A DNA stretch of 64,000 nucleotides from Podarcis pityusensis (lineage: Eukaryota), in the NCBI GenBank assembly GCA_964106645.2, contig OZ067041.1, one strand, 5' to 3'. Positions within the stretch are counted from its first letter, which is position 1; every line of letters starts with the position of its first letter. The position numbers and the translations under genes were made by a program. A model generated the notes under the pieces. It was not told the DNA's origin and did not search any database. It saw only the letters and a program-made list of their open reading frames with translations. Shown here piece after piece: positions 41,857 to 58,349 of the stretch.

Positions 41857-42058
41857 ATGCTCAAAGACCAGTATCTTGGTTACAGAAAAACCTTTTTGGG
41901 GGATGCTGTGGATGTGTTTGAGGCCAGGCGAACGGAAGCAAAGAAGTGGCAGACGGCCCCGCGTGTTACTACTGGACCGACCCCTTTCAGCAGCATACCA
42001 AATGCCGCAGCTGTTGCCATGGCTGCAACACTTACCCAGCAGCAACAGCCTGCTACAG
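41857..42058 (+). CDS. NUP58: NUP58 exon 13 (MLKDQYLGYRK...QQQQPAT); read-through to 42081 gives p45-type end GLSAFKL*
   Basis: 202 nt, weak gtctga donor. Confidence 0.96.
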
Positions 42059-47335: not shown

Positions 47336-47467
47336 NNNNNNNNNNNNNNNNNNNNNNNNNNNNNNNNNNNNNNNNNNNNNNNNNNNNNNNNNNNNNNNNN
47401 NNNNNNNNNNNNNNNNNNNNNNNNNNNNNNNNNNNNNNNNNNNNNNNNNNNNNNNNNNNNNNNNNNN
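47336..47467. other. Assembly gap (132 N), probably covering NUP58 exon 14
   Basis: N run directly preceded by a polypyrimidine tract; expected exon not found elsewhere in the intron. Confidence 0.85.
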
Positions 47468-49479: not shown

Positions 49480-49575
49480 GGTTTGGAAGTAGCTCTGCTT
49501 TTGGAAGCAGTGGCACGGGTGCACCATCTTTTGGATTTGGAGCTACAAATAAGCCTTCAGGAAGCCTTAGTGCAG
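49480..49575 (+). CDS. NUP58: NUP58 penultimate exon (GFGSSSAFGS...FGFGATNKPSGSLSA)
   Basis: 96-nt phase-1 exon, FG repeats. Confidence 0.95.
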
Positions 49576-51565: not shown

Positions 51566-51735
51566 GCTTTGGCAGTTCGAGCACATCTGGGTTTAACTTC
51601 AGCAATCCTGGCATCACGGCATCTGCTGGCCTGACTTTTGGGGTGTCCAACCCAGCCTCTGCAAGTTTTGGCACAGGAGGACAACTTCTCCAGCTGAAGA
51701 AACCCCCAGCTGGGAACAAGAGGGGGAAAAGATAA
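51566..51735 (+). CDS. NUP58: NUP58 last coding exon (GFGSSSTSGFNFSNPG...LKKPPAGNKRGKR*)
   Basis: Characteristic NUP58 C-terminus, TAA at 51733-51735. Confidence 0.97.
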
Positions 51736-53782
51736 ATGTGAAAAGGGGGGTGGGAGGGCTGGGGTCAGAGAAAAGGGACAACTCATTGGCATAAGTCATC
51801 CTGTGGGGAAATCTATTTTTTTAAGCTGATATATAGTAGGTGCTCTGTGTCCTTGGAGATTTATAACATTTTGCTACTTCTTCCCATTCTGGATTATAAA
51901 ACGTAATTGTAACAAACAGCTATTTTTGGGGTGACTCAGAACTCGTGTAAGAATCCTTTTTTTGTGGGGGGGGGATCATAGTTTTTAGATATGCACTTCA
52001 TTATTAAGAAACTGTGTAAAACCATCTATTTAACCTAAGATTAGTAACAGGATATTTTTGTTAATATGCTTTAAACCATATAGAGAGATGCATATTTGGT
52101 TTCCTTGTACAGGTAAAGTATATTCTAGTACAAATGCTTGAGTCCATGTCTTCTGTTTCTTGATATGGCCTTTTAAAAAACATCAGGGTGGTTTTGTGAA
52201 TATGTGTGTAAATATATACAGTATAAACGCACACTCAGATATGTATATGGGTACATACCATGCATTTCAGACCTTGTCTTGTAAGACAGAACGTTTTCAA
52301 GTTTGTGTTTTGGGTTCTTTCTCCCCTCCCATGTTGTGGCAGCATATTGGAAAACCAGCTGTAACTAATGCATGTGAGACATTGTGGGCTGTTTTGTCTG
52401 TTTTCCATTTCTGTTTTGTTTCCATTCAGTGCTTTAAATGAACTGGATGTTCAATGTAAACGTTCTCAGACTGGTTTGGTTCTCAGCTGTGGCGGTGTGT
52501 CTTTGCTGTACATTTGCTCAACTGCAGCCACGCGAACTACAGGGCTTCAGGTAGATTTTTGGAGAGCTGATGACTGATTAGTGCATTCTGAAACAGCATT
52601 CACAAACAGCTCACACAAGCGGTGTGGTCTCGCGAGAAGAATACATGGGAGTGATACCACAGATGCTTCCCAAAGGATGCTTTGAGGATGCAGAAATGTC
52701 TGCCCATAAAAATCAGTGTGCTGCTCTCCCATGTTGGGCTGTTCACATGAGCAGGTCATGTGCACGAGTGGTTTGCATAAGATGGGGCTGTTTTGGAACA
52801 GACGGGTCCACTTAAAGTTAGGGCTCACTTCCATCCTAGAGCAGACAGACTCTGCTTCTCTCATCATTCTGCATGAATTGATGCTTACAGGTAGCAGGCA
52901 TGGTAAGAGGCTACGAAGGGTCAATCACAGCAGGACACTTGAGAGTAAACTTCAATATTTGACACAATTACAATAGTGTTAGCCTTGCATTAGTTGAGCT
53001 GCATCTCCAGCTCAGTGAATGTTTTAAAACAGAAACAACAGGAACATTTATTGCCTTAAATGAGGGACTACAGTCATAGTCCTTGAACTGTGTTGCCAGC
53101 ACAGACCCCATTCACTTCACTGGGGCTTGTGCTAGGCCATCTCTTTTGAGGGCCGGGCTGTAAATTAGCCCATCAGATCATTGCTCTGTGTGTGTGCGTG
53201 TGCGTGTGTTTGTGTACAGAATTTTTGTGAGGTCTAGCCTTTTTACACAAAGAATATTTTGTATATAACTCCAAGCAGATATTCGTAGTTCTCATCTAGG
53301 CACCTTTAAAAACAAAAAAATTAAGTCGTGCACGTATGTATTCTCTGGTTTTGAAGTTGGTTGCTTTCAGGCATTACTATTTTTGTAAGTTCTGCCAGCG
53401 TTTTTTGTCTTCATGCAACAGCAAGTCATCTGGCAAATGTGTGAGTCCTGAGTGTGATGCATTCAGAAGTAAGGGGAATAGCTTACTTAACACAAGTCTT
53501 TTCACCTTTATATATGAAGTATGGGCCGTTTTTCTTTTTCTTTTGGAAAGAGGAAGAAATTAAACTTGACAGAATTAAGGAAAACTTAAAAACAAATTTC
53601 AGGCCACAGTTCTGTTTTGAATTTGTATTTGGGCTCCAGCAAAAAAGATGTGCAAACTTGGATGTATGTTAACTCCTTTTTACAATATTAAAATGTTAAA
53701 ATTTCTTTGTATATAATTTGTGAACCTATTTTTTTAACTGTGTTGTCTTTGTCCATATGTGCATCTTTTCTGTTCTACAAAT

Positions 53783-53788
53783 AATAAA
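53783..53788 (+). terminator. NUP58 (p58) poly(A) signal; 3'UTR ~51736-53810
   Basis: AATAAA after a U-rich, TGTA-rich, repeat-poor UTR-like tract, with GU/U-rich sequence downstream. Confidence 0.7.
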
Positions 53789-54039
53789 ACGGATTGAAGT
53801 GTGATGTGTCAATAATACTTGCATTTATTTCTGCATGGTGTTTTCATTCCTCTTGGGCTGTGATCCCCCACACATGATATTGTGCTCAGTGGACTATCGG
53901 TGGTGCTGTTTCAAACAATATGTTTTCTGTTACATAAGAACAACCCTGAGCGTTTCCCAATATGCATTTGTATGGCCAGTGTAACATATGATCCAATCCA
54001 ATCCCTGGATTTAACCAGCAGCAATTCCTTTCAGTTCAA

Positions 54040-54455
54040 TTATTTTCTATACCACCCTTCTGAGGACCATAGAGCAGTTCACAGTATTAAAGGTTCACAG
54101 TATTAAAAACACAAAATACATAACAGTAACAAAAACAATACACGCATCCCCAACAGTTTAAAAGGCCATAGATTGTTTAATTCACCAAAGGCCTGGTTAT
54201 AGAGAAACATTTTTGCCTGGCACCTAAAGGCATATAATGAAGACGCCGGCCGAACCTCCCTGGGGAGAGCATTCCACAAATGGGGAGCCACTGCAGAAAA
54301 GTCCCCGTTCTTGTGTTGCTGCCCTCCCAACCTCTCATGGGGGAGTCACATGAAGAAGGACCTCAGGTGATAAACACAGAGTCTGGGTCTGTTCATATGA
54401 GGAGAGGCAGTCCTTGAGGTATTGTGGTCCTGAGCCTTTAAAAGGCTTTATAAGC
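54040..54455 (-). mobile_element. L2-type LINE 3' fragment; related fragments at ~23290-23520, 35335-35800, 40960-41370, 50660-50930, 8430-8600
   Basis: FSAVAPHLWNALP peptide typical of L2 RT C-terminus. Confidence 0.72.
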
Positions 54456-54989
54456 CTCAATCACAATGGACAGAAAAATGAACCGTCGTCGTACTTGGAG
54501 TTGCTGGTGTCCTTTGTCCATTATATTCACGTCCACAGTTGTGTTGCTGAAAAACACTGGAACTGAGTGTGGCGAAAACACCCTGAGTCCTCCCTACACT
54601 TAGGAACATTTTACTGATTTGGCACTTGGGTTGGATAGATCCCAATTCAGCATTTAAATATTTTAAAATTTTGACTGACTCAGTACAATTCTATGCTTCA
54701 TGTTACTTTTTTTAAAAAAAAAATACAGTATAGGGTTGGTATCAGGGATCTGTTAGTTTCTAAGGCATCTCACATCATATCTTACAACCTTTATTTTTTG
54801 TCTTCAGCTCAAAACCTGGATAGATGAATTAAAATACTGAATGATCCGTATCATTTGTTGTTTCAGCCACTGGCCATTACAAAAGATCATGAAAAAGTTA
54901 CACTTGATATTGGACGTTTGGTAACTTTAATACCTTGGGTGATAGCTAATTCCCCCCTGAAATGGTTTACAACATATGATAAGGAAATG

Positions 54990-55750
54990 CGATGTCTATG
55001 TACTATTTCTATGTAGTTTGTGCAGGAATTCCATGTGGATTGTGTGCTTCAATGGGATACACACTGAACATATTCTCAACAAAGAATACATTAGCCCTTT
55101 ACCCAGGACTCTTTGTTTTTTTTTGCTGAGACACAGCCAACCCCCAAAAACTTTTATAATTTGTATGTAGATAAGTAAATCAAATGTTTGACTCTTTGTT
55201 TCTGTGGTGCTTACGTAGGAATGCCTAGTGGATCAGGTCCAGCTCCTAGTGTATCACCTGTTGCAATGGGAAATATACCAAAGATATTTACAACGGATTA
55301 TGCATCAGGTAAATTTTGCAACCTTAACATTGCCGCAGGGATCTTTGCTTTTGCTGCAACACCAAGCAACTCTGCATTGGAATTGTTTCAATTTGGTATC
55401 AGGATAAGAAAAACAGGTGTTTGACTTTTATTTCTATGGTGCTTATGCAGGGGTTTCGAGTTCACCAGGTCTGACTCCTGCTGCATCGTGCACTTCAGTA
55501 GGATGTTCACCGAACCCATTCACAATGAATACACTAGGTAAATTTGTTAGTCTGTGAGGTGCTGCAACGCTTTGGGTTTTTTTGCTGTAGCACAAACACC
55601 CCCGCCCATAGAAATTGTTTACAATCAGATGTTTGTGTTCTATTTCTGTGTGGCACTTATGCAGGAATTCCAGGCCCAGCACCCAGTGGATCATGTACTT
55701 CAATAGGATCTGCACCAAACATACTCTTAATGAAGACTGTGCCAGGTTAG
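54990..55750 (+). repeat. Diverged tandem array of four ~200-bp units, each with acceptor plus exon-like ORF (55026-55094, 55219-55308, 55451-55537, 55665-55745)
   Basis: Shared tgtttg..ctatttct.tg.gg..cttatgcag|G acceptors, related peptides, lengths 69/90/87/81 nt (all 3n), GT donors on units 2-4. Confidence 0.8.
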
Positions 55751-56464
55751 ATAATTTATATGACATTTATGCTCTGGTTCTTACTATGATTTTCAGCTCC
55801 GAGGTAACTCTGAATGGGTTTCCACTGTACAAAGTGTTTTACCGGTCTCGTGTGACTTTCCCCAGAGATAAGGAGATAGATGTCAGATTACAAAATATTA
55901 GCTTGCTGAAATCTGCTTGGCAAGCTGTGTAGATAACGGGGGTTTAGGCCTGCACTCATATCAGCCCCAGCAACTATGGCCAGTGGCGAGCAATGAGGGG
56001 AGTTGTAATTCAGCAACAACTGGAGGGCTAAATGCTCCCTGCACCTGAGATAACTTTTCTCTAGGTCTTTCCTAACTAAAGACAACTCTTACCCTACCTG
56101 AAGACATGCATTGTCCCAGCAAGAGTGGACCATAATCCACTGGTACAGAATACACTTTGTTTTCCCTCCCACCCAAAAGAGAAAAGTTTGGGCTCAATCC
56201 TTGCAACTCCAGCTAAAAGATTTGAGGTGGGATTATACCCCCCAAACTTGCTGTCTGAGTCTTTGGTCAGGGAGGAAAGCACTGGATTATATGGAATCAT
56301 ACATTTTTTAGAGTGGAAAGGAACTCTGGGGTCCCCCCCCCAAAAAAAGCTCTGATCATTATATCCACCTTGCAACCTCAGCAGATGGCTGCCCTTCTTT
56401 AACTATCTAATGAAGGAGAACTCACCATCTTCTGAGGCAGTCCGTCAAACAGCTCTTATACATA

Positions 56465-56634
56465 CCGTATTTTTTGCACCATAACACTCAACTTTTTTCC
56501 TCCTAGAAAGTAAGGGGAAATGTCTGTGCGTGTTATGGAGGAAATGCCTACGGGTGGCATGCCTACAGATTTTCCTCCTCTAAAAACTATGTGCGTGTTA
56601 TGGTCGGGTGCGTGTTATAGAGCGAAAAATACAG
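56465..56634. mobile_element. Tc1/mariner (Tc2-like) MITE
   Basis: TA|ccgtattttttgcaccataacac ... gtgttatagagcgaaaaatacag|TA. Confidence 0.82.
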
Positions 56635-57425
56635 TACCTTAATCCTGCCACACATTATCATTACCACTAGGTGGCACTAAGTGCCTAGTAGTCCAGCCCC
56701 CCCCCCCCCCCAATATCAGTGGAAAGACTTTGGACCTCCTTGCTTTTCTGAACTGATACTACTACTACCAAAGATTTTCTACCCACCATGCAGAACTCCA
56801 CACTCGGCTCCAATTCAGCAGGCACCTTCTGCTTTTAAGTGAAAATAAATACATTGGGAGCTCCAGCCACTGAATTCCCATACAATATAGGAAGCTGCCT
56901 CAATACTGAGTCAGACCATCTATCTCAATATCGTCTGCACTGACACCTGTTCTGCCCTATATATATGTAAAGCAGTATTTAAACAGTCATGACTTCCCCA
57001 AAAGAATCCTGGGACGTGTAGTTTGTTAAGGCCGCTGAGAGTTGTTAACAGACCCTTATTCCAAGACTAGTTTAACAATCAATCCCTCTCTACAGAGAAC
57101 TCTGGGAATTGTAGCTCCGTGAGGAGAATGTGGGTCTTCCTAACAACTCTCAAAGAAGAGTTGCTATTGTTTTGTTTTCTATTTATTTGTGCTTTTATCT
57201 GTCTTGTGAATCACCTTGAGAACTTTGGATGAAAGGTGGTATATAAATTTAATAAATAATGACAAATAATGTGTTCCGGCCTCTCTGGCCCTCAGGACAC
57301 TCCCCAGGCCACGCCATTCACTGGTCCTGCTTCACCCCCTCCTTGAGTGTTTTTGCTTGGCTGAAATGTGTTATTGACATCTGATAATGCCTCTTTATTG
57401 CCCTAACGGAGGGTACAGAGGAGTG

Positions 57426-57451
57426 GTGTGTGTGTGTGTGTGTGTGTGTGT
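57426..57451. repeat. (GT)n microsatellite
   Basis: Directly visible. Confidence 0.95.
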
Positions 57452-57649
57452 AGAAGCTGGCCTGCTGTAAAAAAAGAAAAGGAAAAAAAGAGTGAGATTT
57501 ACATGAATTGCTCCTCCCACTTTTGTCTCTAGCCACACCCACCACTGGCATGTGATTCCTGGATGTTTGCTTTTGGAAGGGAAGGTGGCCTAATGCATGA
57601 AAATTATTCCCGATCTCCTGGCCTAAATTGTTTTTTCTCTTTACCTCAG

Positions 57650-57729
57650 GCATCATTAAGCGGCGTTCACCAGTAGCACTTAGCACCATCCTAGAAAATG
57701 GGGAGGTTACAGCAACGAAATTAAACTAA
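57650..57729 (+). CDS. Candidate terminal exon (GIIKRRSPVALSTILENGEVTATKLN*) phase-compatible with the exon array
   Basis: Strong acceptor ttgttttttctctttacctcag, open in phase 1; no homology evidence. Confidence 0.3.
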
Positions 57730-58349
57730 GGTGCATAGAATTAATCTCCTGGACAAGAAATGGCCATTCTCTCTCTCCCCCCCCCCCCCCATGCCTTGAT
57801 CCTAATACAGCACTGATACCAAGACCAGACTTTGTACCTGTCGCTTTTTCTCAAGAGTTATTACAAAGGTGACCTAGGCTTCTTGATCTGTGATTACATC
57901 CCTAACAAAGCTTAAAATGAAGGTAGGGTTGCCAATAACTTATTGGTACGCTCCTGTGCCTTTAGCAGCAGCTGGTTCTGCAGCAATGGATATCTCTGTG
58001 TTATGGGAAGCTTTGCCTGCTAATTCCTGCATCTCAAAAAGCTGTTAAAAGCATAGCTACAGAGGCAGTTTGAAAAGCTGGCAGTCCAGAACAAAGTCAC
58101 ATGTTGAGCATTTATGTGCAGGCTGTATCCTAGGAAAGAAAGGATAGAGTTATTTGCCTTATCCTGAAAACCCAGAGCAACTGGGTTGCTTTGTGGTAGA
58201 ACTGCAAGCATTCTCAGAATAACATGGTTGCCTGAACCCACTTTCTAACTCAAGGCCCACTGAGGTAGCATAGATTTCCTTGGTGTGTGACTTGACCGTT
58301 TCACATGACAAATATTTTTCCATCAATGAGTTTTATTTTTTCCACATTC

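What the first reader, a model, noticed from the sequence alone, without database searches (positions are those of the whole stretch)
54990..55750. Cryptic tandem array of duplicated, frame-preserving mini-exons just downstream of NUP58
Seen: four diverged units (spacing 193/232/214 bp) each have a near-identical acceptor (tgtttg..tatttct.tg.gg..cttatgcag|G). Each acceptor is followed by a stop-free phase-1 segment: 55026-55094 GIPCGLCASMGYTLNIFSTKNTL, 55219-55308 GMPSGSGPAPSVSPVAMGNIPKIFTTDYAS, 55451-55537 GVSSSPGLTPAASCTSVGCSPNPFTMNTL, 55665-55745 GIPGPAPSGSCTSIGSAPNILLMKTVP. Units 2-4 end in AG|GT donors with 142- and 127-nt introns; unit 1 has lost its donor. Lengths differ (69/90/87/81) but are all multiples of 3, while the spacers vary freely. 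Inference: this pattern suggests selection on a spliced coding sequence. Strand and phase match the NUP58 exon 13 and exon 15 donors, so these could form a lineage-specific alternative low-complexity, non-FG, Cys-containing NUP58 tail. Alternatively they are part of an unannotated gene, or a recently decayed one. I do not recognise the peptide family.
Basis: partly seen in the sequence, partly recalled or inferred. Interest (0 to 1): 0.82.

Follow-up and report, generated by a model that had tools for sequence, protein, structure and literature searches.

The report
Spliced tandem mini-exons beside lizard NUP58
Three of the four repeated mini-exons just past the lizard NUP58 gene are really spliced together and onto a newly found last exon. 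They form a short wall-lizard transcript with a 111-codon reading frame for a probably floppy protein; whether it is its own small gene or an alternative NUP58 tail is still open.

Summary
Four homologous exon-plus-intron units lie at 54990-55840, with acceptors 193/232/214 bp apart, exon lengths 69/90/87/81 nt and phase 1-1.

New evidence: a 380-nt RNA-like contig from a related organism joins unit 2, unit 3 and unit 4. There the same frame runs 26 codons to TAA (57727-29), overlapping an ATTAAA signal, and the contig ends 17 nt later. Unit 1 is covered only by an unspliced contig, so it is a dead exon.

The only protein relative among 1.84 billion representatives is an 85-aa "hypothetical predicted protein" of Podarcis lilfordi. 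It comes from this same locus, with its own start exon at 54466-54490 and some different splice sites.

Splice acceptor regions are 80% identical among the expressed units, exon bodies 63% and spacers 50%. Amino-acid sequence shows no constraint (dN/dS about 1).

Best reading: a wall-lizard-restricted, independently transcribed small gene or proto-gene built by tandem exon duplication. The NUP58-tail idea is frame-compatible but unproven and less likely. The 5' exon could not be placed.

Modest interest: an orphan gene already loosely annotated in one species.

The parts
54466..54490 (+). Start exon of the Podarcis lilfordi gene model CAI5773160.1 (MDRKMNRR, then C|GTACTT donor). It sits at the edge of a high-copy interspersed repeat. 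The X1 transcript does not use it.
   Evidence: tblastn of P0001 residues 1-8, sequence and annotation name. The X1 contig's upstream exon ends in AG, whereas this exon ends in GTC.
54990..55094 (+). Unit 1: a conserved acceptor region plus a 69-nt pseudo-exon (55026-55094) that is open in frame but has no GT donor (TAG|CC).
   Evidence: It is covered only by an unspliced low-depth X1 contig, 54954-55137.
55219..55308 (+). Unit 2 mini-exon: 90 nt, phase 1-1, with an in-frame ATG at 55221-55223.
   Evidence: X1 contig record 4 piece 55217-55305; splice sites; Kozak context gtaggaATGc.
55309..55450 (+). Intron 142 nt (GT..AG), removed in the X1 RNA contig; the X5 contig's depth pattern fits the same removal.
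   Evidence: Pieces 55217-55305 and 55448-55535 are adjacent in the record. The 3-nt 'cag' offset is an alignment ambiguity.
55451..55537 (+). Unit 3 mini-exon: 87 nt, phase 1-1.
   Evidence: X1 record 4 piece 55448-55535 and X5 record 19 piece 55448-55555.
55538..55664 (+). Intron 127 nt (GT..AG).
   Evidence: Record positions 97-176 (80 nt) are unlisted, but the bin depth of 29.1 equals 72.8 x 80/200 (the 80-nt unlisted piece), which places them on unit 4.
55665..55745 (+). Unit 4 mini-exon: 81 nt, phase 1-1.
   Evidence: Depth and numbering of X1 record 4. P0001 residues 34-60 match at 100%.
55746..57649 (+). Intron of 1904 nt holding high-copy interspersed repeats (about 56400-57400) and a (GT)13 run.
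   Evidence: (depths of 1e5-1e6 in the DNA runs).
57650..57742 (+). Terminal exon with acceptor cctcag|GC. The frame continues as GIIKRRSPVALSTILENGEVTATKLN, with stop TAA at 57727-57729 and ATTAAA at 57720-57725. The transcript contig ends at 57742.
   Evidence: X1 record 4 piece 57647-57742; sequence and translation; poly(A) signal scan; P0001 residues 60-85 match at 100%.

Best explanation
The array is part of a real, spliced and probably polyadenylated transcript. It was found so far only in wall lizards (Podarcis and close relatives).

**Shown.** An exon-plus-intron unit was duplicated in tandem into four copies. Three copies (90, 87 and 81 nt, all phase 1-1) are still spliced together and onto a 93-nt terminal exon.

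**What it could encode.** The mature RNA carries one open frame. It runs from the ATG at 55221 in unit 2 to the TAA at 57727, which is 111 codons. If the start exon annotated in P. lilfordi is used, the frame is 120 codons. The product would be rich in Ser, Pro, Gly, Thr and Ala, with no signal peptide, no FG motifs and no predicted fold.

**Inferred.**
- The transcript most likely starts at its own promoter, in or beside the interspersed repeat at 54140-54490, rather than at the NUP58 promoter. That would make it a small taxonomically restricted gene or proto-gene.
- Selection has maintained the splice signals and the reading frame over a period much longer than the divergence of the species compared here. 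The amino-acid sequence itself drifts at about the neutral rate.
- If a protein is made, it acts through composition and length, as a disordered polypeptide. Otherwise the RNA, or the act of splicing it, is what matters.
For: **Splicing and 3' end.** X1 contig record 4 (380 nt, depth 72.8) lies on 55217-55305, 55448-55535 and 57647-57742. The 80 unlisted letters are accounted for by the depth on unit 4. All joints fall at GT..AG sites. The unique stretches 51800-53599 and 56200-56399 have zero depth in X1, which is the pattern of RNA, not DNA.

**A second organism.** The X5 contig lies on unit 3, and its depth in the preceding bin fits about 36 nt on the end of unit 2, as a spliced unit 2-unit 3 junction would give.

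**No retrocopy.** The DNA runs X7 and X10 show no extra depth that would indicate a processed copy.

**Terminal exon.** It keeps the frame, stops after 26 codons, and carries ATTAAA 17 nt before the contig end.

**Independent annotation.** P0001, 'Hypothetical predicted protein [Podarcis lilfordi]', maps to 54466-57726 as a stand-alone gene spanning 3256 nt.

**Conservation gradient among expressed units.** The acceptor region is 0.80 identical, the exon 0.63 and the spacer 0.50 (Fisher p = 0.0013 and 0.005). All six GT/AG pairs of the three expressed units are intact. Exon lengths are all multiples of 3.

**Conserved array.** Two related species keep it collinear and single-copy, with indels only in introns (55377, 55574, 55879).

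**No known family.** No Pfam family matched, the ESM Atlas model has pLDDT 0.38, and Rfam found nothing in the array.
Against: - The 5' exon of the X1 transcript was not located. It ends in AG, so it is not the P. lilfordi start exon, which ends in GTC. NUP58 exon 15 (ends GCAG, phase 1) fits equally well.
- The P. lilfordi model comes from an EVM consensus that includes ab initio predictors. Its weak start-exon donor may not be real (PMC10214862).
- There is no sign of amino-acid-level selection. Between species there are 6 nonsynonymous and 2 synonymous changes. dN/dS between units is 0.5-2.0. Differences by codon position are 36/27/31.
- Two of the three frames are open in every unit, and the dead unit 1 is also open in frame. 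The ORF evidence is therefore weak.
- The X1 and X5 runs are labelled RNA only by a guess in the run records.
Confidence: 0.5

Rival explanations
1. Alternative 3'-terminal exons of NUP58. The exon 15 donor (49575) skips the canonical last exon (51566-51735) and its poly(A) sites and splices to unit 2. This would replace the last 56 FG-rich residues with a 112-residue non-FG tail ending ...TATKLN.
For: - Same strand. The exon 15 and exon 13 donors are phase 1 and end in AG, as the X1 contig's upstream exon does.
- The join G|GA keeps the split-glycine pattern of the NUP58 C-terminal exons.
- The upstream 29 nt are not in the non-repeat parts of 51800-55217 (depth arithmetic).
- The contig starts exactly k-1 letters before the point where the exon16 (GC) and unit2 (GA) paths would branch.
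- NUP58 is known to produce a second isoform, Nup45, by alternative splicing (own knowledge; both forms are listed in PMC2173148).
Against: - No junction to NUP58 was observed.
- The P. lilfordi annotation keeps the locus as a separate gene.
- Unit 2's acceptor (interrupted pyrimidine tract, TAG) is weaker than that of the canonical last exon, yet the array contig has depth 72.8. The NUP58 3' UTR has depth 0-2.8 in the same run. This is a weak argument, because contig depth is a poor measure and a human-likeness filter may have removed NUP58 contigs.
- No unit contains an FG dipeptide.
- The k-1 argument fits a repeat-derived first exon or an unspliced precursor equally well.
Confidence: 0.25
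2. A spliced but non-coding or functionless transcript. It would be a long non-coding RNA, or transcriptional noise started from the neighbouring transposon, whose open frame is a leftover of the exon that was duplicated.
For: - dN/dS is about 1 between species and between units, with no third-position excess.
- Exon divergence from organism A (9 of 273 nt) is no lower than intron divergence.
- Splice-site use varies between the X1 contig and the P. lilfordi model, which reads units 2 and 3 in another frame.
- There are no homologues outside Podarcis.
- A possible first exon lies inside a high-copy repeat with cryptic donors at 54366 and 54419.
Against: - Splice acceptor regions are much better conserved than exons, and exons better than spacers.
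- All GT/AG sites of three units are intact despite about 37% exon divergence.
- Exon lengths are all multiples of 3, and only one frame is open through all exons up to a stop in the last exon.
- The transcript is found in two organisms; word shares suggest several samples hold part of the stretch.

These points show function at the RNA or splicing level at least. They do not prove translation.
Confidence: 0.2
3. A decayed, silent tandem duplication, or a transposon or satellite fragment, with chance splice-like motifs.
For: Unit 1 has lost its donor. High-copy repeats flank the array.
Against: - A spliced contig with exact GT..AG joints exists.
- The array is at single-copy depth in the related species' DNA.
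- There is no other copy in the window.
- Tandem Repeats Finder reports nothing here.
Confidence: 0.03

Closest known systems
CAI5773160.1 / UniRef100_A0AA35K7U2, 'Hypothetical predicted protein' of Podarcis lilfordi (85 aa)
   Same: Same locus and strand. It uses the same unit 2-unit 3 junction. Unit 4 and the terminal exon are 100% identical in the same frame.
   Different: The model starts at ATG 54466. It enters unit 2 at an internal acceptor (55282|55283) and leaves unit 3 at an internal donor (55497|55498), so it reads both in another frame. The X1 transcript uses the full exons and a different upstream exon that ends in AG.
Tandem exon-duplication arrays of symmetric short exons that encode disordered repeats (for example titin PEVK exons or elastin phase-1 exons; own knowledge)
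   Same: Exon and intron were duplicated together. The exons are about 80-90 nt with the same phase at both ends and a glycine codon split at the junction. Length is free in steps of 3, and the peptides are low-complexity.
   Different: Only three active copies. No sequence relation to those genes. No amino-acid-level constraint was detected. The host transcript is tiny.
NUP58/Nup45 alternative C-terminal isoforms of vertebrates
   Same: The array lies next to NUP58 on the same strand. Phase and the split-glycine junction are compatible with the NUP58 C-terminal FG exons.
   Different: The exons lie 3.5 kb beyond the canonical stop. They have no FG motifs, no observed junction to NUP58, and no detectable DNA or peptide similarity to NUP58 exons.
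Taxonomically restricted (orphan, proto-) genes with transposon-associated first exons
   Same: There are no homologues outside one genus in 1.84 billion representatives. The ORF is short and predicted to be disordered, evolves at a near-neutral rate, and has variable splice forms. The annotated start lies at a repeat edge.
   Different: The splice signals look older than the species compared. The units are about 37% diverged from each other, against 2-3% between species. The locus is therefore not evidently young, and a de novo origin is not shown.

Membership tests
NUP58 alternative isoform (Nup45-like alternative C-terminus) | A splice junction joining a NUP58 exon to the array | tested here: inconclusive
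   The X1 contig has 29 nt of an upstream exon ending in AG that could not be placed. It is absent from the non-repeat parts of 51800-55217. Exon 15 lies outside the stretch laid, and only one read-laying run was allowed.
NUP58 alternative isoform (Nup45-like alternative C-terminus) | Reading frame continuous from the NUP58 exon 13 or exon 15 donor | tested here: met
   Both donors are phase 1 (GCAG|GT at 49575, ACAG|GT at 42058) and unit 2 begins in phase 1.
FG-repeat nucleoporin domain | Repeated FG (FxFG or GLFG) dipeptides in polar spacers | tested here: not met
   No FG in any unit or in the terminal exon. There are only two Phe in 112 residues, and no Pfam nucleoporin FG family matched.
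Tandem exon duplication array | Adjacent homologous units, each containing an exon plus its flanking intron | tested here: met
   MAFFT alignment A1 and nhmmer E 1e-37 to 1e-59 over about 215 profile positions including spacers.
Tandem exon duplication array | Symmetric phase and lengths in multiples of 3, so that copies can be spliced in series | tested here: met
   69/90/87/81 nt, all phase 1-1.
Tandem exon duplication array | Copies actually spliced into RNA | tested here: met
   Units 2, 3 and 4 are joined in one X1 contig; the X5 contig's depth pattern fits a unit 2-unit 3 join. Unit 1 is not included.
Taxonomically restricted (orphan) protein-coding gene | No detectable homologue outside a narrow clade | tested here: met
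   A profile of the units against 1.84e9 representatives gave one hit, from P. lilfordi. The word search with P0001 found only itself. Limits: the profile has 30 positions, and isoforms inside 50% clusters are hidden.
Taxonomically restricted (orphan) protein-coding gene | Evidence of translation, or of purifying selection on the protein | tested here: not met
   dN/dS is about 1 between units and between species. Translation cannot be tested with these tools.
Interspersed repeat / satellite | Many copies in the genome | tested here: not met
   Depth over the array equals the single contig depth in X7 and X10, against 1e4-1e6 over the flanking repeats. There is no other copy in the window.
snoRNA/miRNA host gene with repeated exon-intron units | A conserved small RNA in each intron | tested here: not met
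   Rfam at E<=1 finds nothing in 54900-55900. The spacers are the least conserved part of the units.

The most novel reading that the evidence does not exclude
The array is an old, wall-lizard-restricted alternative ending of the nucleoporin NUP58. It would swap the last FG segment for a Cys-containing, non-FG disordered tail. In the tissue sampled in run X1 this form would be more abundant than the canonical one, meaning lizard nuclear pores carry a lineage-specific channel nucleoporin variant.
Probability: 0.2. Interest if true: 0.6.

Novelty: new member of a known kind. Interest (0 to 1): 0.4.

Why it matters
The finding shows that a reader working from raw sequence alone correctly predicted exon boundaries that public RNA data confirm. 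It also adds the missing terminal exon, stop codon and poly(A) signal.

Biologically, the locus is a compact example of a transcript built by tandem exon duplication. Its splice signals and reading frame have been kept while its amino-acid sequence drifts. That makes it useful for asking how short, lineage-restricted genes or lncRNAs arise and persist next to an essential gene.

If the NUP58 link were shown, it would be a lineage-specific change to a central-channel nucleoporin. As it stands, it is an uncharacterised orphan locus of modest interest.

Tried and rejected
1. Tandem Repeats Finder found nothing in the array because the units are too diverged.
2. An nhmmer profile of whole units and of exons against the window found no further copy and no similarity to NUP58 exons 15 or 16 or their flanks.
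3. Earlier scan notes, searched by place and by words, held nothing relevant.
4. Pfam on each exon peptide and on P0001 gave no family.
5. The ESM Atlas gave only sub-threshold bacterial look-alikes (0.81 or less) and an unfolded model.
6. Rfam gave only a weak mir-2511-like hit (E 0.32) inside a repeat at 56466-56549, outside the array.
7. The look-up of encoding contigs for P0001 reported the gene span, but the DNA and neighbouring genes were withheld.
8. The literature on Nup45/Nup58 splicing in the open library gave no exon-level detail.
9. A pairwise global aligner with free end gaps was uninformative, because shuffled controls scored as high. I replaced it with column counts on the MAFFT alignment.
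10. I considered a processed-retrocopy explanation for the spliced contig and rejected it, because the relatives' DNA runs show no extra depth on the exons.
11. Exons were handled one by one, by reference.
12. The N run at 47336-47467 was left untouched.

Full report
**1.

- The stretch 54990-55840 holds four head-to-tail units of about 193-232 bp.
- MAFFT aligns them over both the exon-like part and the spacer (A1).
- An nhmmer profile of the alignment recovers exactly these four places in the 64 kb window (E 1e-37 to 1e-59). Nothing else scores better than E 0.57, and there is no match to the NUP58 exons.
- Acceptors precede 55026, 55219, 55451 and 55665.
- Units 2-4 end in AG|GT. Unit 1 ends in TAG|CC and has no donor.

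**2. The NUP58 context**

- The canonical last coding exon of NUP58 is 51566-51735 (...LKKPPAGNKRGKR, TAA at 51733-35).
- Exon 15 is 49480-49575.
- Both exons are phase 1 at their ends with a split glycine codon. The exon 13 donor at 42058 is phase 1 too.
- The array therefore lies about 3.5 kb beyond the NUP58 stop. It also lies past the poly(A) signals at 53559, 53687 and 53783.

**3. RNA evidence**

The look-up of sequencing runs offered five small runs guessed to be RNA (organisms A and B) and six DNA runs of the same or related species. I laid X1, X5, X7 and X10 on 51800-57799.

*The X1 spliced contig.* X1 holds one contig of 380 nt at depth 72.8. Its pieces lie on 55217-55305, 55448-55535 and 57647-57742.
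- The 80 letters between record positions 96 and 177 are not listed. The depth of 29.1 in bin 55600-55799 equals 72.8 x 80/200 (the 80-nt unlisted piece), so they lie on unit 4.
- The 2-3 nt offsets at each joint are the repeated 'ag' or 'cag' letters, which fit on both sides.
- With GT..AG placement, the joints are 55308^55451, 55537^55665 and 55745^57650.

*Is X1 really RNA?* The unique stretches 51800-53599 and 56200-56399 have zero depth in X1, so the run behaves as RNA, not DNA. The DNA runs X7 and X10 show no extra depth on the exons, which argues against a processed retrocopy.

*A second organism.* In X5 (organism B), a 157-nt contig lies on 55448-55555. Its depth in the preceding bin fits 36 nt on the end of unit 2, so the unit 2-unit 3 joint appears to recur in a second organism.

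*Unit 1.* Only an unspliced low-depth contig (54954-55137) covers it, so it is a dead exon.

**4.

- At 57650 a good acceptor (ttttttctctttacctcag|GC) opens an exon in which the same frame continues: G|GC... = GIIKRRSPVALSTILENGEVTATKLN, then TAA at 57727-29.
- ATTAAA lies at 57720-25, and the X1 contig ends at 57742, 17 nt later. That is where cleavage would be expected.
- The spliced RNA thus has a complete 3' end with a stop codon in its last exon.
- An in-frame ATG at 55221-23 (gtaggaATGc) gives a self-contained 111-codon frame.

**5. Relatives**

- A profile of the four unit peptides (A2) searched against 1.84 billion representative proteins gave a single hit, P0001, 85 aa.
- P0001 is CAI5773160.1 / A0AA35K7U2, 'Hypothetical predicted protein [Podarcis lilfordi]'. 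It is alone in its 90% cluster.
- A word search with P0001 found only itself.
- P0001 maps to this locus as follows:

| P0001 residues | Window coordinates | Note |
|---|---|---|
| 1-8 | 54466-54489 | Donor C\|GTACTT after 54490 |
| 9-17 | 55283-55309 | Internal acceptor in unit 2, another frame |
| 18-32 | 55452-55496 | Unit 3 in another frame, left at an internal donor A\|GTAGGA |
| 34-60 | Unit 4 | 100% identical |
| 60-85 | Terminal exon | 100% identical |

- The annotated gene spans 3256 nt, which matches the distance from ATG 54466 to the stop at 57729. The DNA and neighbouring genes were withheld.
- The window is therefore from a close relative of P. lilfordi; there is one amino-acid difference.
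- That annotation is an EvidenceModeler consensus of RNA-seq/Iso-Seq, protein alignments and ab initio predictions (PMC10214862). The start exon is a lead, not a proof.
- If that start exon were joined to the full unit 2, the frame would also stay open (C|GA), giving 120 codons.

**6. The unresolved 5' end**

- The X1 contig extends 29 nt upstream of 55219, and those letters end in AG, because the piece starts at 55217 with no mismatch. The upstream exon is therefore not the P. lilfordi start exon, which ends in GTC.
- Depth arithmetic excludes a 29-nt piece at depth 72.8 from every non-repeat bin of 51800-55217.
- That leaves two places: the repeat-rich 54000-54600 (donors CAG|GTGATA at 54366 and GAG|GTATTG at 54419), or sequence upstream of 51800, where NUP58 exon 15 (GCAG|GT, phase 1) is a candidate.
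- The 29 letters plus the shared G equal k-1 = 30. The contig therefore starts at a branch of the assembly graph. That fits a repeat-derived exon, the exon 15 choice between exon 16 and unit 2, or an unspliced precursor equally well.
- In favour of an independent start: the separate gene model in P. lilfordi; low-depth unspliced contigs at 54745-55137 but none in 51800-53599; and the high depth of the array contig against 0-2.8 on the NUP58 3' UTR.
- The depth arguments are weak. Contig depth is a poor measure, and a human-likeness filter can remove NUP58 contigs.
- My estimates are about 0.5 for an independent unit and 0.25 for a NUP58 tail.

**7. Is it under selection?**

*Among the three expressed units* (Fisher p = 0.0013 and 0.005):

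| Region | Identity |
|---|---|
| 40 nt before the acceptor | 0.80 |
| Exon body | 0.63 |
| Rest of the spacer | 0.50 |

- All GT and AG dinucleotides are intact, and all exon lengths are multiples of 3.
- Shuffled exons are all open in this frame in only 0.8% of trials.
- The units differ from each other by about 37%, while the related species differ from the window by 2-3%. The duplications therefore long predate those species, and the splice signals have been kept throughout (inference).

*Among species*
- The array is collinear and single-copy in two related species.
- The listed indels fall only in introns (55377, 55574, 55879).

*At the amino-acid level there is no constraint*
- Eight exon substitutions were seen between species, 6 nonsynonymous and 2 synonymous.
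- Nei-Gojobori dN/dS between units is 0.5-2.0, and differences by codon position are 36/27/31.
- Two of the three frames are open in each unit, and the dead unit 1 is open as well.

Function at the level of splicing and frame is therefore likely. Translation is plausible but unproven.

**8. What the product would be**

- Counted exon by exon, the 112 residues are 58% Ser, Pro, Gly, Ala and Thr. There are three Cys, two Phe, no FG dipeptide and no N-terminal hydrophobic segment.
- No Pfam family matched any exon or P0001.
- The ESM Atlas model of P0001 has pLDDT 0.38, which means no fold.
- Rfam finds no small RNA in the array.
- The N run at 47336-47467 was not touched.

**9. Verdict**

- The NUP58-tail interpretation is possible but not shown. 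The better-supported reading is a small, wall-lizard-restricted transcription unit built by tandem exon duplication and already loosely annotated in P. lilfordi as a hypothetical protein.
- It is a new member of a known kind, an orphan or proto-gene with duplicated symmetric exons, and of modest interest.
- The decisive experiment is to find the 5' exon with long-read cDNA and to test translation.

Noticed in passing
window 54140-54490: A high-copy interspersed repeat, with depth up to 6e5 in related species' DNA contigs and many loose ends at 54255, 54301, 54305 and 54436. It carries cryptic splice donors (CAG|GTGATA at 54366, GAG|GTATTG at 54419) and runs up to the ATG of the P. lilfordi gene model. 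It may supply the first exon or the promoter of the array transcript. I could not name the family with these tools.
   Followed up: partly
window 56400-57400: A second block of very high-copy repeats (depth up to 1.6e6) with inverted joints lies inside the 1.9-kb last intron. Poly-C sits at 56697-56711 and (GT)13 at 57426-57451. A weak mir-2511-like Rfam hit (E 0.32, far below the gathering score) at 56466-56549 on the minus strand is probably chance.
   Followed up: no
window 47336-47467: A masked N run of 132 bases lies between NUP58 exon 13 (donor at 42058) and exon 15 (49480-49575). That is where an FG-rich exon 14 would be expected.
   Followed up: no
window 51566-51735: The canonical NUP58 last exon encodes ...GFGSSSTSGFNFSNPGITASAGLTFGVSNPASASFGTGGQLLQLKKPPAGNKRGKR*. 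From memory, this is nearly identical to the mammalian C-terminus. Candidate poly(A) signals follow at 53559, 53687 and 53783. The only trace of the 3' UTR in the two RNA-like runs is low depth in bin 53600-53799.
   Followed up: partly
window 55283-55497: The P. lilfordi gene model uses an internal acceptor in unit 2 (ccaaag|AT at 55282|55283) and an internal donor in unit 3 (TTCA|GTAGGA at 55497|55498). It reads those parts in a different frame and returns to the main frame in unit 4. This is either a minor isoform or an artefact of gene prediction.
   Followed up: partly
window 55108-55144 and 55567-55603: A 37-nt spacer motif (T-run followed by GCTG.A.CAC) is 76% identical between the introns after unit 1 and after unit 3. 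It stands out from the otherwise poorly conserved spacers and could be an intronic splicing element.
   Followed up: no
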